IMG/VR virus record: IMGVR_UViG_3300036853_000446
Coordinates: 186,001 to 250,000 of that record
Direction: 5' to 3' (one strand)
DNA length: 64,000 nucleotides
A program made the position numbers and the translations under genes. Of the stretch, positions 638 through 28,359 are shown piece by piece (position 1 is the first letter of the stretch; every line of letters begins with the position of its first letter). The notes under the pieces were generated by a model. The model made no database searches. It was not told the origin of the DNA and worked only from the letters and a program-made list of their open reading frames with translations.

Positions 638-650
638 ACCTCATGAGCCC

Positions 651-1763
651 CTACTTCCTTTTGGTCGGCTCGGGCTTTTTGGCGTCGGCTTCCACAGCGA
701 GGGTTTCGGCAGCGGTCGAAATCGAAGCGGCGGCCTGTGCAATCGAATCGGCGGCCTGTGCAATAGACTCTGCCGCCTCGGTGCGGCCCGCTATATTGTC
801 CGCTCGAGGTGGCTTGTTCGCCTTGAGCTTGGCTGTAGCAGGGCCCACTTTCACTTTAGCGGGGCCCACTAAGGTTGGCTCCGCCCTTATGACGGACGTC
901 ACCGCGACAGGTTCCACTGTGATCGGCTTTACCACCTTGGCGGGCTCAGTCCTTATGGTCGGCGCCACTGCGGCGGGCGCCACTGCGACGGGCTCCACTG
1001 CGACGGGCTTGACCACCTTGGTGGGCTCTGCCCTTATGGTCGGCTCCACCACGGCGGGCTCCACTGCGACGGGCTCAACCACGGCGGGCTCCCGGGTCCA
1101 GCCTCCGGAAATCTGTAGCGAGGCATCTTCCTCGTTGTCCTGATTCCAACGACGGAGCACGGCGTTCGACAGCTTGACGGTTTCCGCGTGGATACTGTCC
1201 TCGACGTTCTGGGACCACGTGCCCAGGATGGCCAATCCAATGATGGACACGATTGCCGTGAACAAGCCGAACGCGGTGCAGTTCATGGCTTCGGAGATAC
1301 CCTCAGCGAGGATCCTCGATTTTTGCGTGTAGTCTACGCTCTCGGCACCCACGGAACCAAACGATTTTATGAGCCCCAGGATGGTCCCAAAGAGTCCGGA
1401 AAGCATTGCGAGATTCGCATAGAGGGCGAGGTACCGCACGCCCCGATGGATGAGCGGCAGCTCGTACAGCGCCACCTCGTCCATCCCCGCTTCGAAGGCT
1501 TTGATTCCGCGGGAGGCTCTCGCGAGTCCGCCGCGGGTGATGCGCCCAAGGGGCGTCTTGGCGGCTGCAGCAAGTCGAATGGCTCGGCTCCAGTCGCCGG
1601 CCTCGACGAGCTTCGTAATCGTTGCCGTAAAAACGTTGACCTCCTGATATGCCGAGAACAAGTAGAGGGTCTTCCAACAGAAGCCGTAAGCCACGGCGCC
1701 GAGCCAGAAAAGAATGGGCCACATCGCCCAGCCTCCCGCCCTGAAATGCTCGAGGAGGGTCAT
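651..1763 (-). CDS. MotA/TolQ/ExbB proton-channel protein with repetitive C-terminal tail
   Basis: GGWAMWPI N-terminal TM, GLFGTILGLIKSFG and GISEAMNCTAFGL TM motifs; about 150 aa Pro/Val/Ala/Glu tail. Confidence 0.9.
   Translation of the reverse strand: MTLLEHFRAGGWAMWPILFWLGAVAYGFCWKTLYLFSAYQEVNVFTATITKLVEAGDWSRAIRLAAAAKTPLGRITRGGLARASRGIKAFEAGMDEVALYELPLIHRGVRYLALYANLAMLSGLFGTILGLIKSFGSVGAESVDYTQKSRILAEGISEAMNCTAFGLFTAIVSIIGLAILGTWSQNVEDSIHAETVKLSNAVLRRWNQDNEEDASLQISGGWTREPAVVEPVAVEPAVVEPTIRAEPTKVVKPVAVEPVAVAPAAVAPTIRTEPAKVVKPITVEPVAVTSVIRAEPTLVGPAKVKVGPATAKLKANKPPRADNIAGRTEAAESIAQAADSIAQAAASISTAAETLAVEADAKKPEPTKRK
865..1092. repeat. Degenerate coding tandem repeats in the TolQ tail
   Basis: Recurring gcgggctccactgcgacgggc-like units encoding EPVAV / PTIRAEPTKVVKP. 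Confidence 0.8.
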
Positions 1764-2458
1764 ATCTCGAGAGCGTCCAGAAGCTCGCGGGCAAGATCCG
1801 CGTCGTCGACCGGCGAGGGCCGGGTATCGTAACCGCTTTCATGAAGCCGCGAGCCCACGGCGCCCCGGGCGTTGTCCCCCGTGTAGTGGCCCTCGTAGAG
1901 CAAGGGCTCTCCGACGATCGTGTGAAACCTGACCTGGCAGAAACGCATTTTCGGGAAGACCCGCACTGGGATCTGCGCCGTCACCTCCAGCGTGAACTGA
2001 CCGTTGAAGCCCGGGTCTCCGTAGCCCGCCGTGTGATGGATGAGAATGAAGCAGCGGCCAAGGCTCGATTTGCCGTCGACGATCGACACGTAGTGGTCGG
2101 TGTGTATGCGCTCGGCCGTGTGCATCAGATAGCAGATGCCGGGTTTGAGCACCCAGCCGATCGCGGGGTCGATCGTTCGCGTCACCGTCGGCCACGCCGC
2201 CCGCGTGTCCCAGATGACCTCGGGGTAGGTCACGACTCGACCCGACACCGCCCTGTATTCACGGCCATCAACCGAGGGCCGCTTGCAGTCACCTTCCTTG
2301 AAAGTCCCCTCGTAGAGGGTCACCCGATCCCCGAGCGTGAGATCGACGGACGCCGGGTTGACGCGCTTCGGGTTGAATGGATCAATCTCGATTCGCCCGG
2401 CGTCGATCTGTTTACGGATTTCAGGGCCCGTCAGGATGCCTTGAGCAGCAGGATTCAT
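1760..2458 (-). CDS. dcd: dCTP deaminase
   Basis: NPASVDLTLG, DGKSSLGR, TAGYGDPGFNGQFTLE, RFCQVRF motifs. Confidence 0.95.
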   Translation of the reverse strand: MNPAAQGILTGPEIRKQIDAGRIEIDPFNPKRVNPASVDLTLGDRVTLYEGTFKEGDCKRPSVDGREYRAVSGRVVTYPEVIWDTRAAWPTVTRTIDPAIGWVLKPGICYLMHTAERIHTDHYVSIVDGKSSLGRCFILIHHTAGYGDPGFNGQFTLEVTAQIPVRVFPKMRFCQVRFHTIVGEPLLYEGHYTGDNARGAVGSRLHESGYDTRPSPVDDADLARELLDALEI

Positions 2459-2497: not shown

Positions 2498-3880
2498 TCA
2501 GTGATTCCTGAACTGCCAATCTTGGACAATGGCACCCTCAGCCGGCAATGGCCTTTCTTTCCAATCGGCGATGAGCCTCTCGAGCGGTTTAATATCCGAG
2601 GCCATCGACTTGATCATGTCGGGAAACTTACGCTTTGCAGTTTCAACGCCCTTATTCCACCCGCGGTCACCAAGCCTGACGAGCGAGCGAACATCGCCGG
2701 GCACCACAAAAAGGATATCGAGAGTTCCAGCATCAATCTGAGCCAGTAACTCTCGAAGCTTCTCCTGTTGCAAGATGAGGACTTTCACGAGGTGCTTGGT
2801 CCCTTCGGGGGATAACTCAAACGGCGGAAAGCCCGCACTAATGCAGTTGCCCTGGATGCTTCCCCACCCCGGTCGGGTGAAGCCATGATTCACTACGGTC
2901 GGGAGACCTCCCGACGCTTTCAGCTTGACGTTACGGAAGCATCCTCCACATGACCCAGTGTTGTTCCTGGTCCGTTGTGCGCCCGGCTGATGCTCCTCCA
3001 TTCCGAGAGCATCGAGTACCTGTTTACTGAAGCTCGTCTCCTTTTTAAGCCAAGTGACGTAACCGAAGCTCCGAATAAACTTGGTAGCTGGCTTGGGTCC
3101 AAGCTTTGCCAAGTTACGGAAATCTCCTTGTTTGATCGACCGCCGCCACACATTATGCTCAGGTAGGACCTCGAATGTCTTGCCCTCAGGCGACGTTATT
3201 CTGAAGCCGGCGGCGCCGACCCACAACTTGAACTCGAATCCCGTCGCTTCGGGTCCCGCACCGGGAGCCGCACGAACGTCGGTGATATCCATGACGTAAA
3301 TTGCATCCGCGCGGGGCGAGACGGGCAGGCTCGCTACTTCATGCTTTCTCGCGTACGCATGCAATTCGGCCACTTCGGCAGCCACTTTTGACACAAAATC
3401 GGTTTCGTACAGAACATGTACGATTCCGATGCACGGTTCTATGTTCCAACCCCCGAGATGGTCGAGAACCTTCTTTAGCTTGCCGATGCTTTCGATCGGG
3501 GTCGTCACACCCTTACGGAGCTTCAGCAGGATGGCCTCCATGTCGTCGGCAGCCTGGATGTACTGCTCGGCGACGCGGGCCCCGATGAGATCGATGGACT
3601 TCTTGTTCATGGGCATCCAATTCGCACATTTCAGGTAGCGCACGGCGAGCCGTGTTGCGAGCGGAGCCCGTCGGATCTTGAAGAGGGCGATCGTCTTGGT
3701 CTTGTGGGGGCTCTTGTTGAGAGGCTGCAGCTCGACCAACGGGTTACCTCTACCATCGTCATGGAAGGCAACTATTTTTGCGGGCACATTGAGGAATTTG
3801 CCCATCATCACCAAATCCCCGACGTTGAAAAACGCGGCGGCGATGCCCCGGCCATTCTTTTGCTGCCTTGCAGTCCGCAT
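2498..3880 (-). CDS. Leader-bearing protein with two RVA-x-x-Y motifs and C-terminal Cys/His (Zn-binding-like) domain
   Basis: ATRLAVRYLKCA and GARVAEQYIQAA; GSCGGC...NHGFTRPGWG..GNC. Confidence 0.75.
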   Translation of the reverse strand: MRTARQQKNGRGIAAAFFNVGDLVMMGKFLNVPAKIVAFHDDGRGNPLVELQPLNKSPHKTKTIALFKIRRAPLATRLAVRYLKCANWMPMNKKSIDLIGARVAEQYIQAADDMEAILLKLRKGVTTPIESIGKLKKVLDHLGGWNIEPCIGIVHVLYETDFVSKVAAEVAELHAYARKHEVASLPVSPRADAIYVMDITDVRAAPGAGPEATGFEFKLWVGAAGFRITSPEGKTFEVLPEHNVWRRSIKQGDFRNLAKLGPKPATKFIRSFGYVTWLKKETSFSKQVLDALGMEEHQPGAQRTRNNTGSCGGCFRNVKLKASGGLPTVVNHGFTRPGWGSIQGNCISAGFPPFELSPEGTKHLVKVLILQQEKLRELLAQIDAGTLDILFVVPGDVRSLVRLGDRGWNKGVETAKRKFPDMIKSMASDIKPLERLIADWKERPLPAEGAIVQDWQFRNH

Positions 3881-3948
3881 TGCATTCGGGCCGGGCCAAA
3901 AGTAAATCCGCGAGAATGAGGCACTCGCGACCCCCAACGGTCGTCACC

Positions 3949-4307: not shown

Positions 4308-4601
4308 GTGATGGGGTCCATCGTCGTCGTTCACCAACTCGAAGGTGGCTACCGCAGACGGTGGGTCTTCGAGTGGCACGGCCGAGACGTCGTCCTCTTG
4401 CGCTACCACCTCGAGCGTCGCGAGGGCAAAGGCCACCGACTCGTCGAATTCTTCGACGGCCAGGATGCCGGCGACTACGGCAACTGGAAATGGCTCGAGG
4501 AGTCCGAAGTGCCCTGGGACGAGGAGCTTCAGGGTGAGGTCGGACTGGCCATCATCAGCAGGCTACGGATCAGAAGGCCGAGCGAGAGCCGCGACGGCTA
4601 G
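4308..4601 (+). CDS. Hypothetical protein
   Basis: CGGTGTA at 4291-4297, 10 nt before the GTG. Confidence 0.65.
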   Translation: MMGSIVVVHQLEGGYRRRWVFEWHGRDVVLLRYHLERREGKGHRLVEFFDGQDAGDYGNWKWLEESEVPWDEELQGEVGLAIISRLRIRRPSESRDG

Positions 4602-4626
4602 AGTTCTTATCAAGGTCACCCATCGT

Positions 4627-5136
4627 ATGATCGACGCGCATGAAATAGTCCCGCTTCTCTGGCAAGGTTCAAAGCCCAAACCCGGGCGCGAGATAGCCGA
4701 TGCGGGCTTCGATGTCCTCGTGTTCTGCGCGCGAGATCACCAACCCTCGCCGGCCTCCTTCCCCGGGCTCGAGGTCATTCTCGCCCCGAACGATGATCAT
4801 ACTTTCCTCACGAAAGACGACTTGGCCGTGGCTGTCAGCACGGCGACTCGGGTGGCCAAGCGTCTCTTGTCGGGAAAAAAGATCCTCGTGACCTGTTACG
4901 CGGGGATCAACCGCTCCGGTCTCGTCGTCGCGCTGACGCTACACAAGGCCTTCGGCTACTCGGGACGGAGCTGCATCGAGCTGGTGAGGCAGCGTCGAAA
5001 GTTCGAAGATGGGGACGTGGCCCTCACCAACACGTTCTTTGTCGAGGCCTTGCTCAAACTACCGGGCCAAGATTTGGTCGTCACCCCAAATATTTGCATC
5101 TCGGATCACCGAGGTCACCGCGGGTTGATTGTGTGA
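4627..5136 (+). CDS. Dual-specificity/tyrosine phosphatase
   Basis: CX5R loop VTCYAGINRSG; EIVPLLWQGS N-terminus. Confidence 0.9.
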   Translation: MIDAHEIVPLLWQGSKPKPGREIADAGFDVLVFCARDHQPSPASFPGLEVILAPNDDHTFLTKDDLAVAVSTATRVAKRLLSGKKILVTCYAGINRSGLVVALTLHKAFGYSGRSCIELVRQRRKFEDGDVALTNTFFVEALLKLPGQDLVVTPNICISDHRGHRGLIV

Positions 5137-6753: not shown

Positions 6754-7128
6754 TCACGCACTCTTCTTCGCGCGTTTCTTTGTTGCCGTGCGACTCGCCA
6801 TGGGTCCACGTTCCAGAGCTTCGGGCGTAGGACGGGTGAAGAGAAATTCTGCTACGATGACACGAAGTAGCGCGTGGAGCGTTATCATGCGATGAGAAGC
6901 CTCGGCTTCGAGTTGATCCCACACATCGTTGGTGAATCGGAGCGATCGAGTCGAGGTACCAATCGCCTTGTTTCCCTTCGGCGGCCGTCCACGGACTGCT
7001 CGTGTGAACGCCAGAGCGTTTGCACGGCCCTCAACCCCGTGCCCGAAGGTGCGCGTGGCGTCCCCTTCGTTATCGGCCTGCAACGCTTCTAGTCGCTTTG
7101 CGGTGGGATCCTTGTCATCAACCTTCAT
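6754..7128 (-). CDS. BrnA-like/RHH antitoxin
   Basis: RGRPPKG..TRSLRFTNDVW..L RHH-like C-terminus; overlaps the BrnT stop. Confidence 0.75.
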   Translation of the reverse strand: MKVDDKDPTAKRLEALQADNEGDATRTFGHGVEGRANALAFTRAVRGRPPKGNKAIGTSTRSLRFTNDVWDQLEAEASHRMITLHALLRVIVAEFLFTRPTPEALERGPMASRTATKKRAKKSA

Positions 7129-7384
7129 AACGTTTCCTTTGCGAGGGCGTGGCAACCCACGCGGTGATGATCTCAGCGTGTTCGTTGTCGACAATCTCGA
7201 CCGTGACGACATACAGCAGCCTTTCGTGGTCTGAGTACCCGATGAAGTTCATCCGCTCGGGGTGACGCAAATTTGGCTCGAAGTAGACGTCCGGATCGTT
7301 GTACGCGGTCTCGGCTTCCTCGAATGAAACGCCGTGCTTGCTGAGGTGCTCAGCCGCGTTCTGCTCATCCCAAGTAAACTTCAC
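7118..7384 (-). CDS. brnT: BrnT family toxin
   Basis: FTWDEQN..HLSKHGVSFEEA..ERMNFIGYS..LLYVVTVE..IITAW. Confidence 0.85.
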   Translation of the reverse strand: MKFTWDEQNAAEHLSKHGVSFEEAETAYNDPDVYFEPNLRHPERMNFIGYSDHERLLYVVTVEIVDNEHAEIITAWVATPSQRKRYEG

Positions 7385-7685
7385 ATTAAAGAGTAACACT
7401 AATTATCGTGGAGAGCAACGTCCGAAGCCAAACGGGCACGAACAGGCCGCCCGGGCCCGAGAGTCCGGTATGCAAGTGCTTGAAATCGTTATATAGAAAG
7501 CGGCAGAAAGGCATAGTCCGCTTCCGACGGGAGTTTCCGACATCTTGGGCCAAAGAGGCCCGTTGGCCTGATTGGGGCCATCGGGGGCCAACCCGAGCGC
7601 GGACGGTTTGGAAGCGACTGACGAACTCGTTGAAGGTCCGCGTTACTCAACTGTCCAATGGATCGACCCGGTGTATTCCCCGGGC

Positions 7686-8006
7686 ATGAAGAACTTCGAC
7701 CCAGCCACGATTCGTCCCCTCTGGAACCGCGTCCTCATCGAGGAAGACCCCAAGCCCACCGTGAGCGAGGGCGGAAGCATCATCCTCCCGTCCACGGCGC
7801 GCGACGCCAAATACTTCACGCCCGCGACCGTGCTCGCCGTCGGTCGGGGCAAGCTCCTGAAGAGCGGGAAGCTCGTCGAGATTCCCTTCAGGAAAGGTGA
7901 CCGCGTCGTACTCGGGAAGCGCCAAGGCGTCGAGGTTCATGGCGAGCGCATTCGGATGGTCGACGTCGATACCATCGAAGGTCTGTTAGAGGAAGAATCT
8001 GCGTGA
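7686..8006 (+). CDS. groES: Co-chaperonin GroES
   Basis: IRPLWNRVLI, GGSIILP, VLAVGRG, KGDRV; CGGTGTA 10 nt upstream. Confidence 0.9.
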   Translation: MKNFDPATIRPLWNRVLIEEDPKPTVSEGGSIILPSTARDAKYFTPATVLAVGRGKLLKSGKLVEIPFRKGDRVVLGKRQGVEVHGERIRMVDVDTIEGLLEEESA

Positions 8007-9759: not shown

Positions 9760-11484
9760 ATGCCCGAACTTGGAGAGACGTGGTCTGTAGCACGGATGGG
9801 AGAAACCCGACTCGAGGCAGTCATCATCGCCACCGGACCTTCGATGATCCGGCTCGTCACGCGCGCTGGGAACCGAGTCACGCTTCCCACCAATAGCCTG
9901 AACCTCCTTGGGACTCTCGTGAGCCCCGCCCCGGCGCCGCATACCTGTAGTAATTGTCGCCAGGCCGCTTTCTTCCGTCACACTTTTGGCCCCGAGACCG
10001 TTTGGGTCTGTGAGGATCACCTGCCACACGGGGCCAGAGCCTATTTTCCCGGAGACGCGCTTGGGCCGTCCGGACTCGATGTCACGTGTCCGCGGTGCGA
10101 GTCGGCCCTCGTGACGGTCGACCTTCAGCTCGTGCCTCTCGCCAACGGCCGGGCGACGACCAAGTGGAGTTGCGACGACTGTCATTGCTGCTGGAGCATG
10201 CTCGTTGGCCGCGGCCTTGGAGACGACGGGGCGACGCTCGCCGGAGACCTTGCCCTGATGATTGAGAATGACCCCTCGATATCGGAAGCGTGGTTGGGCT
10301 TCGTCGCCTATCGAAACATCTGTCGTGCCATGGGCATGGGAGACGTGGCTCACATCCATGGGATCCCCCTCCAATCGAAATCAGGATTGGCAGATATGCT
10401 GACGCTGGTCTTGTCCGTCGCGAGCCCGGAGCAGACGATGAACATGATCGCCGGGGAGCAATCTCCCCTATTCGGGCTTCAATTCCCCACGCTCGACATC
10501 GGCATCGGCTCGAGTTGGAAACGACGTTCCTTCCCTCCTCAGCGGGAAACGTTTTGCACGATCTTCTCCGCCGATGCTGATCACGTCACGTTTGGTCTCA
10601 TCGGCGCTAACACCGAATACTTGAATTACTACGCCTTGCGCGCCCACGAGGCCGGCCCGCCCATGACGCTCAGCGTCCCGGCCTTCCTGCTTTATTGGAC
10701 CCCGAACGTCCTGTTGACGGAGCGCCCGAGGGAGTGGACGATCTGGCAACACGTCGAGACGCGAGAGATCGTTCAAGTCACCCCCGGAACTCGGACTCAA
10801 TCCTCCAACAATCAGGTCTCGTATTTCACTCCCGACGGCCGACGCGAGGCAACCCCGATCGTCACCTTCTACCGTCTTTACCGGGAATTACCGACGCCAC
10901 CCGAGCGCCACATCTGGCATCAGCACGGCCAACTCTTCACGGTCGAGCGCACGGAAAAGAGCCTCACCCTGCATCCCTACGCGGCGCACGAAGGGTCCTC
11001 TCGAGCCGGCGTGCGCGAGACGACGAGCGCAGATTTCTATGAGCTTTACGAGGCATTGGTCTTCGAAGATCAACTCGTAACGTTTCACGCCGACAAGGTG
11101 GTGCTGCGCAAGAACGCTCGATGGCATCTCAAATCAGACCCCGATCACTCCGTGACCATCGTCGACATTGGGCGCGTGGGCTCGGCCGACTACGTGCGCT
11201 TCACTGACACGGACTTGCGAGTCGAGGAGCTGACGCATTTTTTAGCCGAGTTCGTACACATCGGAATCGAACTTCCCTGTCGAGTTGGCGAGACTTGGGT
11301 TGGGCTCACCGAGCCCAGCCGTCAAGGCGTCATCCTCGAAGTGGACACCACCTTTGGCAGAGCGACGCTCAGGCTTGAAGACGGCTCAGAAGTAGCGATC
11401 TCCCGGGACACGCTCAGCTCGCAGTTTAGGAAACTAGACATTCGAAGTTACTGGGAAATCCTCGACTCAGATGATGGCACCTGA
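9760..11484 (+). CDS. Modular protein with Zn ribbons and repeated Trp-led beta modules
   Basis: CSNC/CEDH, CPRC/CDDC; modules GETWSV, GSSWKR, WTIWQH, RHIWHQ, ARWHL, GETWVG. Confidence 0.7.
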   Translation: MPELGETWSVARMGETRLEAVIIATGPSMIRLVTRAGNRVTLPTNSLNLLGTLVSPAPAPHTCSNCRQAAFFRHTFGPETVWVCEDHLPHGARAYFPGDALGPSGLDVTCPRCESALVTVDLQLVPLANGRATTKWSCDDCHCCWSMLVGRGLGDDGATLAGDLALMIENDPSISEAWLGFVAYRNICRAMGMGDVAHIHGIPLQSKSGLADMLTLVLSVASPEQTMNMIAGEQSPLFGLQFPTLDIGIGSSWKRRSFPPQRETFCTIFSADADHVTFGLIGANTEYLNYYALRAHEAGPPMTLSVPAFLLYWTPNVLLTERPREWTIWQHVETREIVQVTPGTRTQSSNNQVSYFTPDGRREATPIVTFYRLYRELPTPPERHIWHQHGQLFTVERTEKSLTLHPYAAHEGSSRAGVRETTSADFYELYEALVFEDQLVTFHADKVVLRKNARWHLKSDPDHSVTIVDIGRVGSADYVRFTDTDLRVEELTHFLAEFVHIGIELPCRVGETWVGLTEPSRQGVILEVDTTFGRATLRLEDGSEVAISRDTLSSQFRKLDIRSYWEILDSDDGT

Positions 11485-12055
11485 AAAAGAGGTACAAACG
11501 CCCCTAAAGTTGATGTTACCCTTCCGACCAGATATGGGGAACTTCGAGAGCGACCTCGATCAGCTTATCGAACAGAAAATAGTGCGCATACTGGCGCGCG
11601 TACTAGAGAAGCTCGGCGGCGCAGTAGGTTCCGACCGAACCGGCAGCAACACCGACGCTGTCGCGGCTCTCTCCGACGACACTCGTCGTACGACCACCCG
11701 CCGAGCTGGAAAAAAGAAGAAGCGGAAGGCGAAGAAGAAATCGACGGTCACGACCGCTAGAAAAAAGCGAAACAAGAGGGCGGTGGCAATGACTCTAGTG
11801 GGGGCAGCATCTCGGGATGCCATCGTCAACGTGCTCATGCAGAAAGGCCCACTGAAGGTAGCTCAGATCGAAAAGGCCATCGGCCTCACGCAAACCACCG
11901 TAAACCGGCACCTCAGAGATCTGAAGACAGCCAAGGTCGTGGCGACGGTCAGGGATGGGAAGCGGGTGCTCTACAAGGCCGTTCACGACGGACGAGCGGG
12001 ACGCAAGACCGAGCCACCGGTATCGGCAGTCAACGCCCCTGCGACCGCCGCCTGA
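11471..12055 (+). CDS. ArsR-type winged-HTH regulator with basic linker
   Basis: LKVAQIEKAIGLTQTTVNRHLRDLKTAKVV..RDGKRVLY. Confidence 0.8.
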   Translation: MMAPEKEVQTPLKLMLPFRPDMGNFESDLDQLIEQKIVRILARVLEKLGGAVGSDRTGSNTDAVAALSDDTRRTTTRRAGKKKKRKAKKKSTVTTARKKRNKRAVAMTLVGAASRDAIVNVLMQKGPLKVAQIEKAIGLTQTTVNRHLRDLKTAKVVATVRDGKRVLYKAVHDGRAGRKTEPPVSAVNAPATAA

Positions 12056-13437: not shown

Positions 13438-13990
13438 GCACCTCGTCCTCGCCTTTGACCAAAGCCCTCATGGCCTGGACGTACCAGATACCGTCGATAC
13501 TCTCGTTCGAGATCTCGCGCAGCTGGTCTTCGGACTCGAGGACACCCCACCACGACTCGTAGCCGTAGACGACGCGCCACAAGCTCGGGATCCAGAGGGC
13601 GGGATTCTGCATCGAAAGGCTGAAGCTCAACACGCCCGACTCCGGATCGTAAGAGCACCCCACGGTGCGTGCGACGTCACCGAGATACAATCCGAGGTAC
13701 GTCTTGCCTCCAAAATCCTCACCACACGGACGAACCCGAACGAGCCGATTCACCTTCCGACTTCGACCGGGGGCGACGAGTTCTCCGTCGATATGAACGC
13801 CCGTGACGCTCACGGGATACTTGAATGGTTTGACCAAATCCGGCTCTGCCAGCAGCCTCGATAGAGAGTCCTCGCAGATCTTCTCGGCATCCGGAGCCAT
13901 GAGGCTTTCGGCGTAGATCGCTCGGCGCCTCTCCTCGAGTTGTTCGATCTGCTCGTCGATGCTCGCGAGTTCGTCTTTCAAGGTCGACAT
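13424..13990 (-). CDS. Conserved phage hypothetical protein
   Basis: VRVRPC..KTYLGLYLGD..NPALWIP..VYGYESWW. Confidence 0.7.
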   Translation of the reverse strand: MSTLKDELASIDEQIEQLEERRRAIYAESLMAPDAEKICEDSLSRLLAEPDLVKPFKYPVSVTGVHIDGELVAPGRSRKVNRLVRVRPCGEDFGGKTYLGLYLGDVARTVGCSYDPESGVLSFSLSMQNPALWIPSLWRVVYGYESWWGVLESEDQLREISNESIDGIWYVQAMRALVKGEDEVHAQG

Positions 13991-14069
13991 TTGGGTTCTC
14001 CACCATGGCGCGAATCAGGGACCGACTCTCTTTGGATTTGCACTCACGGTGTACTTCAAAGCAGATATT

Positions 14070-14957
14070 GTGGCGAGTCACATTTATTCGGTTGTGGCCA
14101 TCGTTACCGACGATGAGGGCCGTTACCTCGTCGTTTCGCGAAAGGGCGACCACGACGACCTCGGTTGGCCTGGTGGAAAGGTAAACCCGGGCGAAACCGC
14201 AGAACTGGCGATCATCCGCGAGTTGTTCGAAGAGACCGGGCTCCTCGTTTCTCAACGGTTTCTTCGTTCGACCTTCATCGCGGCCGATCAAGAGGGACGC
14301 CTCTGTATGGCGTTCGACATCCTGCAGTACAAGGGCGTCGCTTACTCGAGGAAAGGCGCGTGGGTTGGCTGGGTCAAAGCCGCGAGACTCGTTACCGAAC
14401 GAAATGCGTTTAGAGATTACAACATTGCCGTCTTCAATCAAAAAGGGATCGCCTTCGACGGACCCCCGGAACCTCCCCCGCCCCCTGAACCCTCCGTCGA
14501 AGAAAAGCTCCTCGAGCTGACGGGAACACGAGGGTTTCCACAACGTCACATCACCTTCTTGCACGGGCCGTCGGCTCTGTCGTTTTGCCCCGTGGTGAGC
14601 ATTCCCCAGCCGCGGCTGACCTTCGACCGCAAGTGTTTCGTCGGCCTCTCGAACGAGCCCGTTCTCGGGATACGGGCGCACCTCCAGAAGTCGCTGATCC
14701 CTCTCAACCTGCTTCGCTACATGCACAGCCTCGGGGATCGCTGCATCGCGGCCGTCGTGGCCGTTTGTCCGCATCGGCCCCCCGCCGATTGGGAAGCGGT
14801 GTCGTCGAACATCATCGAGTGCCAGCCCCTTCAGATCGAGGTGAAGCTGACGTTGACAAAGAATCGGGCAGCCACCACCCCCATCGGATCGTCCGTGATC
14901 GTCTCGAGGCCTGCGCGCTCCGAGACGACCACGTCATTTCACCAACCGTTGCCGTAG
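14070..14957 (+). CDS. Nudix hydrolase with C-terminal extension
   Basis: Nudix box PGGKVNPGETAELAIIRELFEETGL. Confidence 0.85.
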   Translation: MASHIYSVVAIVTDDEGRYLVVSRKGDHDDLGWPGGKVNPGETAELAIIRELFEETGLLVSQRFLRSTFIAADQEGRLCMAFDILQYKGVAYSRKGAWVGWVKAARLVTERNAFRDYNIAVFNQKGIAFDGPPEPPPPPEPSVEEKLLELTGTRGFPQRHITFLHGPSALSFCPVVSIPQPRLTFDRKCFVGLSNEPVLGIRAHLQKSLIPLNLLRYMHSLGDRCIAAVVAVCPHRPPADWEAVSSNIIECQPLQIEVKLTLTKNRAATTPIGSSVIVSRPARSETTTSFHQPLP

Positions 14958-22129: not shown

Positions 22130-23661
22130 TCAGTCGGTCCCTTTGATCGAGCACACGGGGTAGAGACGGTTCGCGACGCGCGCGATCCCGCACTGCTCGA
22201 GCACGGATAAAACCTCGTCGAGGTCCTTGTAAACGTGGGCGCACTCGTCGAGTGGGGTCTTCTTGTAATTGCCAACGATACCCTCGACCGTGACGCCCGC
22301 GAAGGTTCTTTTGACCGTCGCCATTTCGTTGTCGATGCGGGCCTGCTTGTGCTCAAATTTGTTCTTAGCCTTGCCCCGCGCCATGAGTCGGCCCGAGCCA
22401 TGATTCACGGAGCAGCCCGCGCCGTACGCCCCGGCGAGCGGGAACAGGATCGCGGCGCCCGTGTACATCGAGCCCGGGATGAGGCAGGGGTGGCCCGTGG
22501 TTTCCCATCGGGACCCCGCGAGGTCGGGATGCCCGGCGGGGAAGGCACGTGTCGCCCCTTTCCGATGGACGAAGCCCTTCTTCGTCGTGCCGTCGGGCAG
22601 CACCAGGGTTTCCTGCTGCACGAGGTTGTGACTGATCTCGTAGTAGACCTCGCCCTGGACGTCGAAGACTTCCTCGAGCGCCTCTTGAATCCCTTGCACG
22701 ATGATGTGCCGGTTGGCGATCGCGTAGTTGGCGGCCGAGTTGTGGTACGCCCAGTATTCCTTGCCGAGGGGCTCGTCGGCGCGAAGCCACGAGTCCTCGC
22801 GGCGCTTCATCGGGAGCCCACGGAGGCGGGCACCTTCGATGAAGAAATGATCGGCGATCTGGTGACCGTAACCGCGCGACCCGCAATGCACCATGACCCA
22901 GACCTCTCCCGTGTCACGGTCGCACTGAAGCTCGACGAAATGGTTACCCCCGCCGACGGACCGAGCTGAGGCAGGGCTCGTTTGCGTGCAGTCTCGACCT
23001 TGTCGAGGTCTAGCCCGTCTTGAATGGGTATGTACTGCCGCTCGCAAACGTCCGCCTTGACGCCCAGCGGCTTGGCGCCGTAGCGCAGGATCTCGTCGAG
23101 CTGCGTGTCGTTGAAAGTCTGCATCATCTCTACGCGGTGCGAGCCGACGCCGGTTGCGATGCGCTTCTCGACCTCGCTGATCCAGCGCCCGCGGCGCTCT
23201 TTGCTCTGGACCTTCTTTGCCGAAAGTCCGGGCACCTTTAGGGACAAGATCCCGCAGTTCACGTCGTACCCTGAGCCCGCCTGAATGAGCGTGTCGTCGG
23301 TGACGATCACGCTGCCCACCGGGACGCCAAAGCCAACATGAGTGTCAGGCATCAGGTACGCGCCAGTAACTCCTTCATAGGAAGCTCCGTTTGCGATCTG
23401 CTGCCAGAGCCCTTCGTCCGACGCCGCATAGAGCGCGTCCGACAAGAATGCGTGGACCTCGGTCTTCATCGAGGCCACCTTGGGCAGGACGTAGTGATTC
23501 TCGCCGGTCTTCACCGCGGTGTATTTGAAGGACATGAGCGCGCGAGGTGTATACTCCAAAGATTCGTGGACTACCACTGTCGGCGCCCGCTCCTCCTGAG
23601 TTTGGCGCCCCACGAATCGCTCGACCGCGTGTTTCGTAATGATCGGTTGGGAATCATGCAT
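22130..23661 (-). pseudogene. rtcB: RtcB RNA ligase split by a 1-nt frameshift near 22960
   Basis: MPDTHVGFGVPVG, GYDVNCG, GGGNHF, HCGSRG, HRKGATRA, NHGSGR, DECAHVYKD spread over two frames. Confidence 0.9.
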
Positions 23662-23741
23662 CGGAGATTCGCTTACACCGGTAAATCTCCTCGAGCGTCG
23701 CGTCCGGATCAAAACCCGTGTGTGGCCCGTATTCGGCATTG

Positions 23742-24623
23742 ATGATGAAGGATTATGCAATCCAGCGCCCGGGCAAAGAACAGAAGGGGCGATCGTTCCG
23801 AGCCACCTGTGTTGCCGTTGCGACGGCCAACAGCCTTTGGGATGAGGGGGGCAAGGATGGCGCGATCCGGCCCGTCTGGGCGATGTTTGCGGGGACCGAA
23901 CAAGAGCTGCGCCCATTTGTGGCCAACCTCAAATCGGGGCGTAAAGCCGAACCCGCCGAGCAATTTTGGAGGGGCGGCGACAATGAGCGCTTCGAGTTTC
24001 TGCGCTCCGTCGGATTCGTCGCGTCCTGGCAGCGGGAAGCCGAGGGCTCCCTCGTGACGCTGTTTCATCCGGAACTCTTTCGACTCGATCCGGGGCTCAT
24101 CGAACCCTCCACTATTCGTTTCCTCCTGTTCGTTCCATCGGATTGGTCGGACGCGCAGCGGGTCGACGTCGCTAGTGCCGTTCGACACGTGCAACCGTTG
24201 GCGCCAAAGCTCGAGGAAGGTTACCTTTCCAGTCTGGTCCCGACGGCCTACCTCTTTGCTGCCTATCTCGACCGGCGCACGCGCGCGCCTCTGGTGGCCG
24301 ACGGCCGCTTCTACCTGCAGCTACTCCTGTCGGCTCTCGACCAGGGGCTCGCGTCTCTCCCGGGGAGAGACATCAAATACAACCGTTCCTCCCGTGACCA
24401 GTGGGGATTTCACAATGGTCACGGCTTCGATTTCGAGATGGGTGGCTCGAGCTGGAGTCCGCTCGGAATCGACTCCATCGGGCTCGCGCACGTGATCTCT
24501 TTCAACTCGACGCACACCGTTTTCGAACAGTTCCTCGCCGAGCAAGTGACCCAATATTTCGCCCGCGTGAAGGGCAAGACGCGGCGCGGGAAGATTGACC
24601 TTTCCGCCTTTGCCGCCGGTTGA
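23742..24623 (+). CDS. Hypothetical protein upstream of the MTase-helicase
   Basis: 293 aa ORF divergent from rtcB. Confidence 0.7.
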   Translation: MMKDYAIQRPGKEQKGRSFRATCVAVATANSLWDEGGKDGAIRPVWAMFAGTEQELRPFVANLKSGRKAEPAEQFWRGGDNERFEFLRSVGFVASWQREAEGSLVTLFHPELFRLDPGLIEPSTIRFLLFVPSDWSDAQRVDVASAVRHVQPLAPKLEEGYLSSLVPTAYLFAAYLDRRTRAPLVADGRFYLQLLLSALDQGLASLPGRDIKYNRSSRDQWGFHNGHGFDFEMGGSSWSPLGIDSIGLAHVISFNSTHTVFEQFLAEQVTQYFARVKGKTRRGKIDLSAFAAG

Positions 24624-24663
24624 TTCCGGATCAAATCCCAACTCTGACCCGTACTACTTTCAA

Positions 24664-27600
24664 ATGGCGAGACCAGAATCGATCGCGGTGGGAGGATTTT
24701 TTCCGACCCCCTCACATCTCATCCCCCTGATCGCTCGACACCTTTCGGTGGGCGATGGGGGCCGCATCTACTACGCCGACCCGTGCGCGGGCGACGGCGC
24801 TGCCATCTACGGCTTACATGAGGCGATGGGTAGTTCCGCGGAGGTCTTCTCGTGCGAGATGGAGGCCGAGCGCCATACGGGTCTCCTGGCTCGCGCCAAC
24901 CTCGACGGTTACAATGCGGCGCAGCGGACGTTGCACGGCGACGCCTTCCGGATCGAGATGTCCGCGGCCATCGGCTGCCTGCTCCTGAATCCCCCCTACG
25001 ACCTCGACTCGGTGCACGGTCGGCTCGAGCAGCGCTTTCTGGAGCGCTTCACGACCGCGCTTTGTGACGGCGGCGTGGTCGTCTTCATCGTTCCCCACTA
25101 TGCGCTCGCGGCATCGGCCAAGACTCTCGCGACCACGTTCGACAACGTCGAATGCTTCCGCTTCCCGAAAGAGGATTTCGCGGCCTTCAAGCAGGTCGTC
25201 GTGTTCGCGTCGAAAACCAAACCGCGACTGTCGCCTGACGCGCTCATCTTGGCGCGAGTCAACGGCTGGGCCAAGACTGTCGCCCGGTGCCCGATCCTGG
25301 GCTCGAAAGAAGACACGCACGAGCTTCACGGCACACACAGCACGCTGACCTGGCAGCTGCGCGAATTTGACCTGAAGGGCCTCATCAGCAAGGCTCGCCC
25401 GTGGCGCGAGTCCCGGTCCAAAGGGGTGGCCGGTGTCCTCACGGTGGTCCCCCACATCCTGCCCGAGATCCCGGTCGAAGACCTGCTGTTCCGTACCTAT
25501 CGGGTTGCAACGGCACCCCGCCCGGCGCACATCGCCGCCGGTATCGCGAGCGGCCTCTTCAACGGACGCGAAGTCTCGAGCGCGACGCCGGGCATGCCGA
25601 ACCTGCTCGTCAAGGGCGTGTTCACTCGCGAGTACGTCACGATCCAGGAGAACGTCAACAGCAAGGGCGAAATCACGGGCGTCACGCAAGTACAGCAACC
25701 CAAGCTCGAAACGACCGTGCTCGACCTTTCGACGAAACGCTACTCGCTGCTCAAACCCGCGGGTTCGGCGACGACATCCGGGATCGACGGGATGGGTATC
25801 GAGGGCCTGCTCGAGCACTACGGGCCGAGCCTCATGAACGTGATGGCGGAGCAGTGCCCGGTCACCTACGACCCGAAGCGCGACGCGACCGGGCTCAGGC
25901 TGGCTCCTGTCGGCCGCCCCCTGTTCCGGGCTCACGAGCACGCAGCCAAGGCCCTGCTGATGTTGCTCGGGGGTCAGGACCTCACCCCGAGCGAACGCAA
26001 AGGCAAGGCCGCCATTCTTCTCGGCGAGATTGGATCGGGGAAGACGGCCACGGTGCTCGCCCTCGGTCAGACGATCGCCAAATGCATCCTGGTGCTCTGC
26101 CCGCCCCACCTACTCGACTCGTGGAAGAACGAGACGAGGGTCGTGCTGCCCGGTGCGGACGTGCGGATCCTGAGTGACCTGAACGACGTCGACGCCCTGG
26201 CCCGTGACCTGGAGCTGCCGAGCGATCGGACCGTCATCGCGGTCCTCTCTCGTGAGGACGGCAAGCTCGGCCACGGCATGGCGGCCGTCGAATACCTGGG
26301 CTGTTGTCCGAAATGCGGCGCGCCCCTGCCCGAAGGAGACCTCGCCAAGAAGCGCGCTCATTGCGACGCCAAGCCCCTGACCTTGGCAGACGACCTGGCA
26401 CGGGCGGCCTTCACGCTCGCTCTCCACGTGGCCCCTCAGGCCCCAGAGGACGGCAACGTCCGGGCCCTTCTCGCCGGGCGTCACCTCGGCCGGTATCTCG
26501 TGAGCCTCGAGGGCCAAAAGAAACGCGCCAAGTGGTCGGGGTTCGATCCCCATTGGGTCCTCACGACGATCGCCACCGTCGTCCAGCGCCTGACGAGCCG
26601 CTTCGATAAGGGCCACGCCGAGTTGCTCGGCGCGCTACTGATGGCCGACTACGACCCGGAGCAGATCGCCACTCTCGCCCGCAAATTCTCCGGCAGCACG
26701 AGCTACGAGCAGCAGGGCCTCGCGCGGGCCCTCACGTGTCTTCTCCCGTTCGGTGGCGAGCTACAAAACGAAGTCCAAAAAGAAACCTACGCGAGCAACG
26801 GCGGCTTCTCTCATTACAAATTCGCGTCGGACGCCGAAACTTTGCGGGAGAAGGGTTTGAGTACGACGATTGGAACGATCGCGCTCGGGGGCGGCCAACT
26901 CCGCCTCAACGACGCCGCGCACGGGTCGGCCAAACTCGCCCTTGGCATTCTGACCCAGCTCGCGGTTCTCGGAAGCTTTCCGCGGGCTAAAGAAGAGTGC
27001 GGCGAAGCACTGTACCAAGCCACCCCGCGGCCTCGTCGGTACCCACTGGCGAAATACATCGCGCGGCGACACCCGAACCTTTTCGACCTCCTCTTGATCG
27101 ACGAGGCCCATGAAAACCAGAACGCCGATTCGGCCCAAAGTAATAGTGCGCACCGTCTGACGGGGCTTGGAATCCCATTCGTGCTCATGACGGGCTCGCT
27201 CATGAACGGCTATGCCGAGTCACTCTTCACGAACATTTGGGCGGTCTCGCCTGACTTCCGCGACGAGTTTAGGCACGACGAAAAGCAGAGATTCAACGAG
27301 CGCTACGGCTACAGCAAACGGATCCTCACGGACAAGGACCGCGAGACCAAAAAAATTGTCTCGTTCGGCACCCAATCCGACCGAGTCGAGCGCGGCGCGA
27401 AGACCGCGGGCAAAGCTCCGGGCCTCCTACCTCTCTTTCTTTTCCGCCACCTGCTCGCGTACGCCGTCACCCTACATAAGGCCGACCTCGCGCTCGATCT
27501 TCCCAAGTGCGCGCACTTTCGACACGAAATCGAGCCGAACGCGACGCAGACCAAAAACTACAAGAGCCTGTTGCGTGCACTGAAGGCGCGGATCAGCCAG

Positions 27601-28359
27601 GACCGCTACTCGACGGAAGGCCTCGCGGGAAAGCTCTTCGGGGCGCTCGCCGAGCTGCCGAGCTACCTCGACCGAGCGACGGGCGACACCGGCAATCAAG
27701 ACGACGGTTCGTACGGGATCTATTACCCGAAAAACGATGGTGGCAAGCTGGTCGCCAAAGCCGAGCCAATGAGTGCCAAGACGATCCTGCCGAAAGAGCA
27801 GTGGATGCTCGACACGGTGCGGGCCGAAATTGCCGAGGGTCGCAACGTGATGGTGTTCTGCTGGCACGTGAACCTACTGCCGCGGCTCGCGCGTCTCTTG
27901 AAAGAGGCGTTGGGAATCGAGTTCCCGGTGCTGCACGCGGACAAGGTTCCGCCCCACAAGCGCGAGGCCTGGATCAACAAGAACGTTCGCGACGTTGGCG
28001 CGCGTGGCATGATCGCCAATCCCGTCGGGATTCAGACGGGTTTGAACAACCTCGTCTATTTCGCTACCGAGATCTGGATGGAGGACCCTGCGTCCAACCC
28101 GACGATCTTCCGTCAGGCCACGGGTCGCGTCGATCGCGTGGGTCAAAAGCTCGAGACCCGCATTCACACGCCGGTCTACGCCGGAACCCTTCAGGTTCAG
28201 CTGCATGACCTGCTGCTCCGAAAGGTGGCCGTCTCGACGGCGACCGACGGGCTCGACAACGAGAGCATGCTCCTGGCGGCCGGCGCCGCGGAGGACGCGA
28301 TGCTGACCGGGCTCTCCATCGGTCGCCAGCTGTGGGACATGATGATGGACGTGAACTGA
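24664..28359 (+). CDS. DNA methyltransferase-SF2 helicase fusion (DUF6094/SNF2-like)
   Basis: DPCAGDG and NPPY; GEIGSGKT, DEAH, MTGS, QATGRVDRVGQ. Confidence 0.9.
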   Translation: MARPESIAVGGFFPTPSHLIPLIARHLSVGDGGRIYYADPCAGDGAAIYGLHEAMGSSAEVFSCEMEAERHTGLLARANLDGYNAAQRTLHGDAFRIEMSAAIGCLLLNPPYDLDSVHGRLEQRFLERFTTALCDGGVVVFIVPHYALAASAKTLATTFDNVECFRFPKEDFAAFKQVVVFASKTKPRLSPDALILARVNGWAKTVARCPILGSKEDTHELHGTHSTLTWQLREFDLKGLISKARPWRESRSKGVAGVLTVVPHILPEIPVEDLLFRTYRVATAPRPAHIAAGIASGLFNGREVSSATPGMPNLLVKGVFTREYVTIQENVNSKGEITGVTQVQQPKLETTVLDLSTKRYSLLKPAGSATTSGIDGMGIEGLLEHYGPSLMNVMAEQCPVTYDPKRDATGLRLAPVGRPLFRAHEHAAKALLMLLGGQDLTPSERKGKAAILLGEIGSGKTATVLALGQTIAKCILVLCPPHLLDSWKNETRVVLPGADVRILSDLNDVDALARDLELPSDRTVIAVLSREDGKLGHGMAAVEYLGCCPKCGAPLPEGDLAKKRAHCDAKPLTLADDLARAAFTLALHVAPQAPEDGNVRALLAGRHLGRYLVSLEGQKKRAKWSGFDPHWVLTTIATVVQRLTSRFDKGHAELLGALLMADYDPEQIATLARKFSGSTSYEQQGLARALTCLLPFGGELQNEVQKETYASNGGFSHYKFASDAETLREKGLSTTIGTIALGGGQLRLNDAAHGSAKLALGILTQLAVLGSFPRAKEECGEALYQATPRPRRYPLAKYIARRHPNLFDLLLIDEAHENQNADSAQSNSAHRLTGLGIPFVLMTGSLMNGYAESLFTNIWAVSPDFRDEFRHDEKQRFNERYGYSKRILTDKDRETKKIVSFGTQSDRVERGAKTAGKAPGLLPLFLFRHLLAYAVTLHKADLALDLPKCAHFRHEIEPNATQTKNYKSLLRALKARISQDRYSTEGLAGKLFGALAELPSYLDRATGDTGNQDDGSYGIYYPKNDGGKLVAKAEPMSAKTILPKEQWMLDTVRAEIAEGRNVMVFCWHVNLLPRLARLLKEALGIEFPVLHADKVPPHKREAWINKNVRDVGARGMIANPVGIQTGLNNLVYFATEIWMEDPASNPTIFRQATGRVDRVGQKLETRIHTPVYAGTLQVQLHDLLLRKVAVSTATDGLDNESMLLAAGAAEDAMLTGLSIGRQLWDMMMDVN

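What the first reader, a model, noticed from the sequence alone, without database searches (positions are those of the whole stretch)
651..1763. Stand-alone myxobacterial-type TolQ/AglR motor subunit with an added repeat tail
Seen: an intact three-TM proton-channel subunit with no ExbD/TolR partner nearby, plus an acquired ~150 aa repeat tail. As I recall, the SEAMNCTAFGL signature matches Myxococcota TolQ/AglR paralogs (AglR powers gliding). Inference: a dominant-negative or rewiring subunit that blocks Tol/TonB-dependent superinfection or alters host motility. It is also the best clue to the host.
Basis: partly seen in the sequence, partly recalled or inferred. Interest (0 to 1): 0.6.

Follow-up and report, generated by a model that had tools for sequence, protein, structure and literature searches.

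The report
Phage-borne gliding-motor subunit, partnerless, with tail
A 407-kb soil phage carries a copy of the ring-forming subunit of a myxobacterial proton-driven gliding-type motor (AglR/TolQ/ExbB family) but none of the motor's other parts, which suggests these huge phages take over the motor of their Polyangiaceae hosts; the extra tail is real but occurs only in this one phage.

Summary
Window 651-1763 (-) is an intact 370-aa ORF. Residues 1-212 are a full TolQ/ExbB-fold channel subunit, and residues 213-370 are a repeat-bearing tail found in no relative. The window lies in a 407,634-bp tailed-phage record (terminase, portal and protease found) with no ExbD/TolR gene anywhere.

The gene is not a one-off. 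About 35 orthologs (50-79% identity, all ~210 aa, no tail) sit in syntenic huge-phage contigs, next to dCTP deaminase, under purifying selection (dN/dS about 0.12-0.2).

Their nearest cellular relatives are exclusively Polyangiaceae. They are orthologs of the Sorangium gene that Luciano et al. 2011 assigned as an AglR homolog (sce2994-type), which in hosts heads an ExbB-ExbD-ExbD operon. So the origin is AglR-type, not TolQ of Tol-Pal or ExbB of TonB.

Phage copies keep the membrane core (71% identity to host) but not the cytoplasmic face (31-41%), which hosts conserve at 89-94%.

Best reading, by inference: the subunit assembles around host AglQ/AglS-type partners and uncouples the motor from host cytoplasmic control.

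The tail is a disordered Pro-rich linker plus a 40-residue helix. It was partly copied from another gene of the same phage and its function is unknown.

The parts
651..1763 (-). Whole ORF, 370 aa (P0001): phage AglR/TolQ/ExbB-family subunit with a C-terminal tail; the stop codon is 651-653
1128..1763 (-). Channel core, residues 1-212: TM1 (~12-34), cytoplasmic loop (39-104), TM2 (~108-135), periplasmic loop, TM3 (~152-180), post-TM3 cytoplasmic helix
   Evidence: Pfam PF01618; AF2 pLDDT about 90; Foldseek TolQ TM-score 0.74-0.75; invariant G126, T127, E158, T163
1452..1649 (-). Cytoplasmic TM1-TM2 loop (residues 39-104), holding 14 of the 19 positions that separate phage copies from host copies
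   Evidence: host-host identity 0.94, phage-host 0.41
1224..1449 (-). TM2-periplasmic loop-TM3 (residues 105-180), almost unchanged from the host; carries GLFGT and GISEAMNCTAFGL
   Evidence: phage-host identity 0.71 against phage-phage 0.73
654..1127 (-). C-terminal tail, residues 213-370, absent from all relatives; cytoplasmic by TolQ/ExbB topology
   Evidence: coding frame supported by GC position pattern and codon score; assembly confirmed
893..1090 (-). Tandem 81-nt (27-aa) Pro/Val/Glu-rich repeats, 2.4 copies (residues ~225-291), within the disordered linker 239-321
   Evidence: TRF; AF2 pLDDT below 50
681..800 (-). Terminal helix, residues 322-361, containing the 21-nt (7-aa) AESIAQA-type heptad repeats (720-778)
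   Evidence: TRF; AF2 helix at pLDDT about 75
693..941 (-). Module (residues 275-357) shared with a second gene of the same phage (genome 347787-348542, minus strand; L125:4785-5543)
   Evidence: tblastn 53% identity over 83 aa, E=3e-10
1760..2458 (-). dCTP deaminase. Its stop codon overlaps the AglR-like start by 4 nt (ATGA). The dcd-exbB pair is adjacent in all five related phage contigs examined, with a 4-nt overlap in four of them.
643..1143 (+). Antisense 166-aa ORF over the tail; most likely not a gene
   Evidence: GC1/2/3 of 0.52/0.68/0.71 is atypical and its codon score is lower than the sense frame

Best explanation
This is a host-derived AglR-type stator subunit, the pentamer-forming 'wheel' of a 5:2 proton-driven motor. 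An ancestor of a clade of ~400-kb soil phages captured it from a Polyangiaceae lineage, and the clade has kept it under selection ever since. The phage encodes no TolR/ExbD-type axle, and that axle carries the proton-accepting Asp. The protein can therefore work only by assembling in the infected cell's inner membrane around the host's own AglQ/AglS-type subunits. The phage copies retain the membrane core that encloses those subunits. They have replaced the cytoplasmic face, which is almost invariant in hosts. The hybrid unit would thus be disconnected from the host's cytoplasmic partners. The net effect is capture of the host's Agl-type motor parts, either silencing that machine or putting it to phage use. 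The gene is translationally coupled to dCTP deaminase, so it is probably made with the nucleotide-metabolism genes and is not a virion part. In this one phage the cytoplasmic C-terminus was extended by about 158 residues. Part of that extension was copied from another phage gene, and 27-aa repeats were then amplified in tandem. The result is a disordered linker ending in a 40-residue helix on each of the five subunits, whose role is unknown. Shown here: identity, origin, absence of a partner, purifying selection, the region-specific divergence, and the tail's anatomy and origin. Inferred: assembly with host AglQ/S, the uncoupling, and the benefit to the phage.
For: Family and fold. Phage record: terminase, portal and protease. 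No ExbD in 407 kb. Conserved dcd-exbB pair in five other phage contigs of 18.8-433 kb. Phage clade monophyletic (SH-aLRT 99) inside the sce2994-type orthogroup (SH-aLRT 100). All 80 best cellular relatives are Polyangiaceae/Polyangiales or unclassified MAGs grouping with them. Host orthologs lie in ExbB-ExbD-ExbD operons with no adjacent TonB_C. Luciano et al. list sce2991-2996 as the AglRQS homologs of Sorangium, with matching layout and sizes. dN/dS is 0.12-0.2 with saturated dS. Pore residues T127, E158 and T163 are invariant. All 19 clade-discriminating positions are cytoplasmic. Region identities: cytoplasmic loop host-host 0.94 against phage-host 0.41; membrane core phage-host 0.71 against phage-phage 0.73. 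In the published AglR5QS-GltG model an FHA domain of GltG binds the cytoplasmic part of the AglR ring (PMC11761067), which gives the host-conserved face a plausible partner.
Against: No experiment or expression data exist; the only run holding this DNA is a soil DNA metagenome. The pentamer-plus-ExbD prediction could not be run. The record is 86% complete, so a partner in the missing 14% is not excluded. The host is inferred only from this gene's phylogeny. M. xanthus AglR itself was not in my tree; the AglR assignment rests on Luciano's table plus synteny. It is unknown which of the two Sorangium AglR-type motors powers gliding. The sequence pattern does not tell whether the phage subunit silences the host motor or drives something new.
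Confidence: 0.5

Rival explanations
1. Maintenance gene (AMG-like). The phage supplies extra copies of the ring subunit to keep the host's own Agl motor, and hence gliding or envelope function, running normally during infection.
For: The proton-path residues and membrane core are conserved and under purifying selection. The pentamer subunit is needed at 2.5 times the level of the axle (5:2 stoichiometry; PMC9389320).
Against: A drop-in replacement should keep the cytoplasmic face that hosts conserve at 89-94%. Phage copies share only 31-41% with it and carry 19 fixed differences there.
Confidence: 0.15
2. One reading: a TolQ/ExbB mimic that poisons Tol-Pal or TonB systems to block superinfection by phages or bacteriocins that depend on them.
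For: Cross-talk between TolQR and ExbBD is known in E. coli (general knowledge, not tested here). Orphan ring subunits could in principle titrate any TolR/ExbD.
Against: The protein is not in the TonB-linked or single-ExbD paralog groups of Myxococcota. NCBIfam tolQ and exbB scores are far below cut-off. The TM3 motif differs from the TonB-linked paralogs (GIAEAL..).
Confidence: 0.1
3. Autonomous membrane-active protein: a ring without its axle that leaks ions and depolarises the cell, giving viroporin- or holin-like timing of lysis or shut-off.
For: There is no partner gene. A central pore exists in ExbB/TolQ pentamers and is plugged by the axle helices in solved complexes (structures listed).
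Against: The gene is coupled to dCTP deaminase in a nucleotide-metabolism region, not a lysis cassette. Near-identity of the pore-lining region to the host version is what partner binding predicts and is not required for a leak.
Confidence: 0.1
4. The tail is not protein. It would be either a read-through or assembly artefact, or the antisense ORF 643..1143 would be the real gene, leaving an ordinary ~210-aa protein.
For: All relatives stop at about residue 210, and small opposite-strand genes follow exbB in related phages. The antisense frame is open. The test on the two paralogous copies cannot separate the sense frame from one antisense frame.
Against: No stop occurs in frame. The GC1/2/3 pattern and codon score favour the sense frame. 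An independent contig confirms the sequence across the junction. The shared module in the second gene lies in the sense frame inside a PHROG-matched region (phrog_3281, residues 168-251).
Confidence: 0.1

Closest known systems
AglR of the AglRQS gliding motor (Myxococcus xanthus MXAN_6862) and its Sorangium homologs sce2993/sce2994 (Luciano et al. 2011, PMC3169522)
   Same: Same family. The phage protein's cellular orthologs are the sce2994-type genes that Luciano et al. place among the closest AglR homologs. They have the same ~220-aa size and three-TM layout, and host copies head an ExbB-ExbD-ExbD operon like aglR-aglQ-aglS.
   Different: It is encoded by a phage, without AglQ/AglS. Its cytoplasmic face has diverged (31-41% identity to host). 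This copy carries a 158-aa tail.
E. coli TolQ in TolQR/TolQRA complexes (PDB 8ODT, 9DDM, 9DDN, 9KPZ)
   Same: Best structural match (TM-score 0.74-0.75). Shares the TM2 Thr and the TM3 Glu/Thr motif.
   Different: About 20% identity. Fails the NCBIfam tolQ cut-off (46 vs 221 bits). No Tol-Pal genes are nearby. Belongs to a different paralog group.
ExbB of the TonB system (PDB 5SV0, 6TYI, 9DDO)
   Same: Same fold (TM-score 0.65-0.71) and same family.
   Different: Fails the exbB cut-off (32 vs 206 bits). The host orthologs have no adjacent TonB, unlike the TonB-ExbB-ExbD-ExbD clusters of the same genomes.
Ring subunits with long cytoplasmic tails: GldL of Bacteroidota gliding/T9SS and ZorA of Zorya defence
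   Same: A 5:2-motor ring subunit with a cytoplasmic C-terminal extension. GldL's tail has been proposed as an anchor to a cytoplasmic partner (PMC9389320).
   Different: No sequence relationship: there are no PADLOC (Zorya) matches. The tail here is a disordered Pro-rich linker plus one short helix and occurs in a single phage.
tolQ-annotated genes in deposited phage records (Acinetobacter phage MD-2021a, 'tolQ_4')
   Same: MotA/TolQ/ExbB-family genes in records filed as phage.
   Different: Only 27% identity over half the protein, so unrelated lineages. No PHROG family matches the protein studied here.

Membership tests
[quoted passage not shown] | Profile match above the curated cut-off | tested here: met
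   66.2 bits against 22.9, E=3e-18, residues 68-190
[quoted passage not shown] | TolQ/ExbB three-TM helical fold | tested here: met
   AF2 core pLDDT about 90; Foldseek TM-score 0.74-0.75 to E. coli TolQ and 0.65-0.71 to ExbB
[quoted passage not shown] | Conserved TM2 Thr and TM3 Glu/Thr lining the pore | tested here: met
   T127, E158 and T163 are invariant in alignments A1 and A2 and align with the TolQ GLFGT / GIAEAL..T motifs
[quoted passage not shown] | Pentamer enclosing two TolR/ExbD-type helices | not testable with these tools
AglR clade (ring subunit of the Agl/Glt-type motors, Luciano et al. 2011) | Orthology with genes assigned as closest AglR homologs | tested here: met
   The phage clade falls in the orthogroup of the 219-220-aa gene of the divergent ExbD-ExbD-ExbB<>ExbB-ExbD-ExbD locus (SH-aLRT 100). 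That locus matches sce2991-2996 in layout and sizes.
AglR clade (ring subunit of the Agl/Glt-type motors, Luciano et al. 2011) | Groups directly with M. xanthus AglR (MXAN_6862) in a tree | not tested
The sister group lies in a Glt-core-like TPR-TPR-ExbB-ExbD-ExbD cluster.
AglR clade (ring subunit of the Agl/Glt-type motors, Luciano et al. 2011) | Encoded with two TolR/ExbD-type partners (aglQ, aglS) | tested here: not met
   Host orthologs have them. The phage has none in 407 kb.
AglR clade (ring subunit of the Agl/Glt-type motors, Luciano et al. 2011) | Powers gliding motility | not testable with these tools
   Needs genetics in a Polyangiaceae host
TolQ of Tol-Pal (NCBIfam TIGR02796) | Equivalog score above cut-off; Tol-Pal gene neighbourhood | tested here: not met
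   46.1 bits against 221; belongs to a different paralog group
ExbB of TonB systems (NCBIfam TIGR02797) | Equivalog score above cut-off; adjacent TonB | tested here: not met
   31.7 bits against 206.2; no TonB_C next to the host orthologs
ZorA (Zorya anti-phage defence) | Match to ZorA models | tested here: not met
   No PADLOC family at E<=0.01

The most novel reading that the evidence does not exclude
A whole clade of ~400-kb soil phages of Polyangiaceae encodes an orphan ring subunit of the host's gliding-type 5:2 motor. They use it to commandeer the host's AglQ/AglS axle and so control the motility or envelope mechanics of the infected cell. This would be the first viral component of a 5:2 rotary motor. 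In this phage, five flexible tails per ring would additionally tether the hybrid motor to a phage or host cytoplasmic structure through the helix module shared with a second phage protein, which has a weak Rho_N/HeH-like C-terminus.
Probability: 0.25. Interest if true: 0.75.

Novelty: new variant of a known kind. Interest (0 to 1): 0.55.

Why it matters
Three reasons. First, 5:2 proton-driven motors (MotAB, ExbBD, TolQR, AglRQS, GldLM, ZorAB) are a current focus of bacterial cell biology, and I found no report of a virus carrying one of their subunits. The jumbo-phage comparative overview does not mention the family, and no PHROG family matches this protein. Second, an orphan ring subunit that is conserved under selection, keeps the axle-binding membrane core and changes the cytoplasmic face is a natural experiment in motor hijacking. 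It gives a testable handle on how phages manipulate gliding or envelope machines in myxobacteria.

Tried and rejected
- Scans of IMG/VR viral contigs with the protein and with an alignment found no relatives. The window's own record is excluded from those scans.
- Pfam hallmark searches of the record (Terminase_6N, Terminase_6C, Phage_sheath_1, Phage_capsid) found nothing. PHROG scans of large ORFs then found terminase, portal and protease.
- The related metagenome contigs could not be searched as whole records for ExbD.
It failed: the candidates all carried ~217-aa L107-type genes. G159 turned out to be Microvenator marinus and G150 an unnamed MAG.
- A sense-versus-antisense test on the two copies of the tail module was indecisive, because the two frames share wobble positions.
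I did not pursue it further.
- Complex prediction of the tail helix with the paralogous helix of the second phage protein gave no verdict (ipSAE 0.03). This is not evidence either way.
- A word search with the tail alone returned only the protein itself.
- Pfam on the tail gave only a sub-threshold DUF4253 match (19 bits against 27), which I disregarded.
- The promoter/terminator scan showed nothing above the shuffled expectation.
- The AU test did not reject a tree with all cellular orthologs as one clade (p=0.34). I therefore do not claim that the phage clade is nested within Polyangiaceae, only that it belongs to that orthogroup.
Full report
**Observation.** Window 651..1763 (minus strand) is an intact 370-aa ORF.

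- Residues 68-190 match Pfam MotA_ExbB (PF01618, E=3e-18, 66 bits against a cut-off of 22.9).
- NCBIfam puts tolQ and exbB models on top, but far below their equivalog cut-offs (46 vs 221 bits and 32 vs 206 bits).
- No PHROG family and no PADLOC family matches.
- An AlphaFold2 model built on 20 sequences gives a confident helical core (residues 1-219, pLDDT about 90), a disordered stretch (239-321, pLDDT below 50) and a terminal helix (322-361, pLDDT about 75).
- Foldseek's best matches are E. coli TolQ chains from TolQR/TolQRA complexes (TM-score 0.74-0.75), then ExbB (0.65-0.71). MotA/PomA are much weaker.
- The TM2 motif GLFGT and the TM3 motif GISEAMNCTAFGL align with TolQ GLFGT and GIAEALIATAIGLF. 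T127, E158 and T163 are invariant in all relatives aligned.
- By TolQ/ExbB topology (established knowledge: N-terminus periplasmic, C-terminus cytoplasmic), the tail is cytoplasmic.

**Where it lies.** The window is bases 186001-250000 of a 407,634-bp IMG/VR virus record, linear, estimated 86% complete.

- Generic Pfam hallmark models did not hit.
- PHROG scans of large ORFs found a terminase large subunit (phrog_2, E=2.5e-24), a portal (phrog_16240, E=1.3e-24), a head maturation protease, ribonucleotide reductase and an ExoV/Dda-type helicase. It is therefore a genuine tailed huge phage.
- The only public run that holds this DNA is a soil metagenome.
- The gene sits in a nucleotide-metabolism and replication region. 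dCTP deaminase lies directly upstream with a 4-nt ATGA overlap. Nearby are a dual-specificity phosphatase, Cpn10, a NUDIX protein, an RtcB-like protein and a large helicase.

**No partner.**

- PF02472 (ExbD) finds nothing in the whole record, and PF01618 finds only this gene.
- I built an HMM from 119 ExbD-type neighbours of the Polyangiaceae orthologs and ran it at maximum sensitivity over every open frame of 40 aa or more in six frames. It gave nothing better than E=0.08, while it recovered the ExbD genes of control loci.
- The absence is limited by the 86% completeness estimate.

**The gene is conserved in a phage clade.** The word search with residues 1-215 returned 2219 relatives. The closest (59-79% identity) are all 203-223 aa.

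- Five were looked up: P0007 on a 107-kb contig, P0002 on 27 kb, P0025 on 90 kb, P0029 on 18.8 kb and P0100 on a 433-kb contig.
- All five lie in the same setting. dCTP deaminase is immediately upstream, overlapping by 4 nt in four of the five. DSPc, Cpn10 and/or an N6/N4 methyltransferase are nearby, along with many ORFs without Pfam hits. No ExbD occurs within 6-10 kb where the contig extends that far.
- Between these phage orthologs dN/dS is 0.12-0.2 with synonymous sites at or near saturation, so the gene is under purifying selection in phages.
- No isolated phage in the INPHARED collection has a close relative. Only 27% matches to 'tolQ_4' of Acinetobacter phage MD-2021a were found. The neighbouring dcd has only ~33% matches, mostly to haloviruses.

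**Cellular origin.** A scan of one genome per species (about 185,000 species) found 535 relatives. The best 80 (47-54% identity) are all titled Polyangiaceae, Polyangiales, Sorangium or Polyangium, or are unclassified MAGs that group with them.

- In a maximum-likelihood tree of 101 sequences, the phage proteins form one clade of 36 rows (SH-aLRT 99). That clade lies inside an orthogroup of 75 rows (SH-aLRT 100) whose cellular members are these Polyangiaceae genes.
- The tree nests the phage clade among uncultured Polyangiaceae. However, an AU test does not reject a tree with all cellular orthologs together (p=0.34). 'Nested' versus 'sister' is therefore open, while membership of the orthogroup is firm.

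**Which paralog.** Sorangium So ceGT47 has six MotA/ExbB genes.

- Mapping ExbD and TonB_C hits shows two TonB-ExbB-ExbD-ExbD clusters, one ExbB-ExbD-TonB_C cluster, one ExbB-ExbD pair, and a divergent pair of ExbB-ExbD-ExbD operons without TonB.
- The phage gene's ortholog is the 219-aa gene of that divergent pair. A Polyangiaceae MAG shows the same locus with sizes 195/185/224 <> 219/187/190.
- Luciano et al. 2011 (PMC3169522, supplementary table) list sce2991-2996 as the closest AglRQS homologs of S. cellulosum So ce56. The sizes are 202/187/225 and 220/189/169, and both ring genes are annotated 'adventurous gliding motility protein R'. This is the same layout and the same sizes.
- The next group out in my tree (L107, L114) lies in a TPR-TPR-ExbB-ExbD-ExbD-unknown-beta-barrel cluster. 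That resembles the Glt/Agl 'core complex' those authors describe.
- The protein is therefore AglR-type. It is not TolQ of Tol-Pal or ExbB of TonB.
- I could not obtain M. xanthus AglR itself, so direct grouping with it is untested.
Among the paralogs I examined, GISEAMNCTAFGL occurs exactly only in this orthogroup and the phage clade. The divergent partner has GIAEAMYNTAFGL and the TonB-linked paralogs have GIAEAL...

**What changed in the phage.** I compared 36 phage copies with 80 Polyangiaceae copies.

- All 19 positions that are fixed differently in the two sets lie on the cytoplasmic side. Fourteen are in the TM1-TM2 loop (residues 40-93) and five are in the post-TM3 helix (residues 183-201).
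- Mean identities by region are shown below.

| Region (residues) | Host-host | Phage-phage | Phage-host |
|---|---|---|---|
| TM1 (1-38) | 0.66 | 0.58 | 0.50 |
| Cytoplasmic loop (39-104) | 0.94 | 0.59 | 0.41 |
| TM2-loop-TM3 (105-180) | 0.83 | 0.73 | 0.71 |
| Post-TM3 helix (181-205) | 0.89 | 0.50 | 0.31 |

- The part that surrounds the axle helices is kept. The part that hosts conserve most strongly is the part the phage copies have replaced.
- In the published AglR5QS-GltG model, the FHA domain of GltG binds the cytoplasmic part of the ring (PMC11761067). That offers a plausible reason for the host constraint.

**Mechanism (inference).** In this family the proton-accepting Asp sits on the TolR/ExbD/AglQ-S helix, not on the ring (established knowledge; also PMC9389320).

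- A ring subunit without a phage-encoded axle can act only through host axles.
- I therefore read the protein as a captured ring subunit that assembles around host AglQ/AglS-type proteins and produces units uncoupled from the host's cytoplasmic partners.
- Whether the outcome is silencing of the host machine (decoy) or a phage-directed output cannot be decided from sequence.
- A plain 'spare part' role is unlikely because the host-conserved face is not kept.
- A Tol/TonB poison is unlikely because of the paralog assignment.
- An autonomous leak is possible but not favoured, given the genomic setting and the partner-type conservation.

**The tail (residues 213-370).**

- It contains 81-nt repeats at 2.4 copies (893-1090), 15-nt sub-repeats, and 21-nt repeats at 2.8 copies (720-778).
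- None of the relatives has it, and a word search with the tail alone finds only the protein itself.
- The sense frame has genome-typical GC1/2/3 (0.69/0.53/0.70 against a genome mean of 0.66/0.46/0.71) and the better codon score. The antisense ORF 643..1143 has an atypical pattern.
- An independent Logan contig covers 300-1301 without any difference. The run may be the source sample, so this excludes an assembler artefact but not sequencing-level issues.
- Residues 275-357 are 53% identical (E=3e-10) to part of a second gene of the same phage (genome 347787-348542, minus strand, 252 aa). That protein's residues 168-251 match phrog_3281 (E=3e-9), and its C-terminus is weakly Rho_N/HeH-like.
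- The tail thus arose by copying a module within the genome, followed by tandem amplification of a 27-aa Pro/Val/Glu-rich unit.
- Its function is unknown. A prediction of the tail helix with the paralogous helix gave no verdict.

- The main interest is not the tail, which is a single-phage oddity. It is that a deep clade of huge Polyangiaceae phages conserves an orphan AglR-type ring subunit with a host-like membrane core and a remodelled cytoplasmic face.
- I rate it a new variant of a known kind, with interest 0.55.

Noticed in passing
G000 347787-348542 (minus strand) = L125:4785-5543 (outside the window): A 252-aa phage protein shares the tail's distal module (EPxSVEP repeats, EPTLVGP, RTEAAESIAxAADSIA... 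heptads). It ends in a weak Rho_N/HeH-like motif, and its residues 168-251 match phrog_3281.
   Followed up: partly
window 7118-7399 (-) and 6754-7212 (-): A BrnT-family ribonuclease toxin (PF04365, E=6e-14) is encoded in the phage. An overlapping 152-aa ORF follows that could be its antitoxin, but it has no Pfam match.
   Followed up: partly
window 4345-5136 (+), 7572-8006 (+), 11471-12055 (+): A dual-specificity phosphatase (DSPc), a Cpn10/GroES homolog and an ArsR-type HTH protein. DSPc and Cpn10 are syntenic with the dcd-exbB pair in most of the related phage contigs examined.
   Followed up: partly
window 2498-3937 (-): A 479-aa ORF upstream of dcd has no Pfam match and only a weak match to phrog_28271 (unknown function).
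   Followed up: no
window 1266-1301: Logan's assembly breaks here into two long contigs with two ~35-nt side pieces, one of which has one differing letter. This suggests a strain-level variant inside the channel-coding region.
   Followed up: no
window 22807-23916 (-), 24595-28359 (+), 13959-14957 (+): An RtcB-like tRNA-splicing-ligase match (phrog_1075), a 1254-aa helicase (phrog_62) and a NUDIX hydrolase. No tRNA genes occur in the 64-kb window.
   Followed up: no
L107 (G150:C1:71000-81000) and L114 (Microvenator marinus): A conserved TPR-TPR-ExbB-ExbD-ExbD-(~460 aa, no Pfam)-(~199 aa)-beta-barrel cluster. In both, the first ExbD appears to lack the transmembrane Asp and the second keeps it (read by eye from the ORF starts printed, not aligned).
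   Followed up: no
G000 1-146000: A long run of large minus-strand ORFs (up to 2149 aa) that includes portal, protease and terminase; probably the structural module of the phage.
   Followed up: partly
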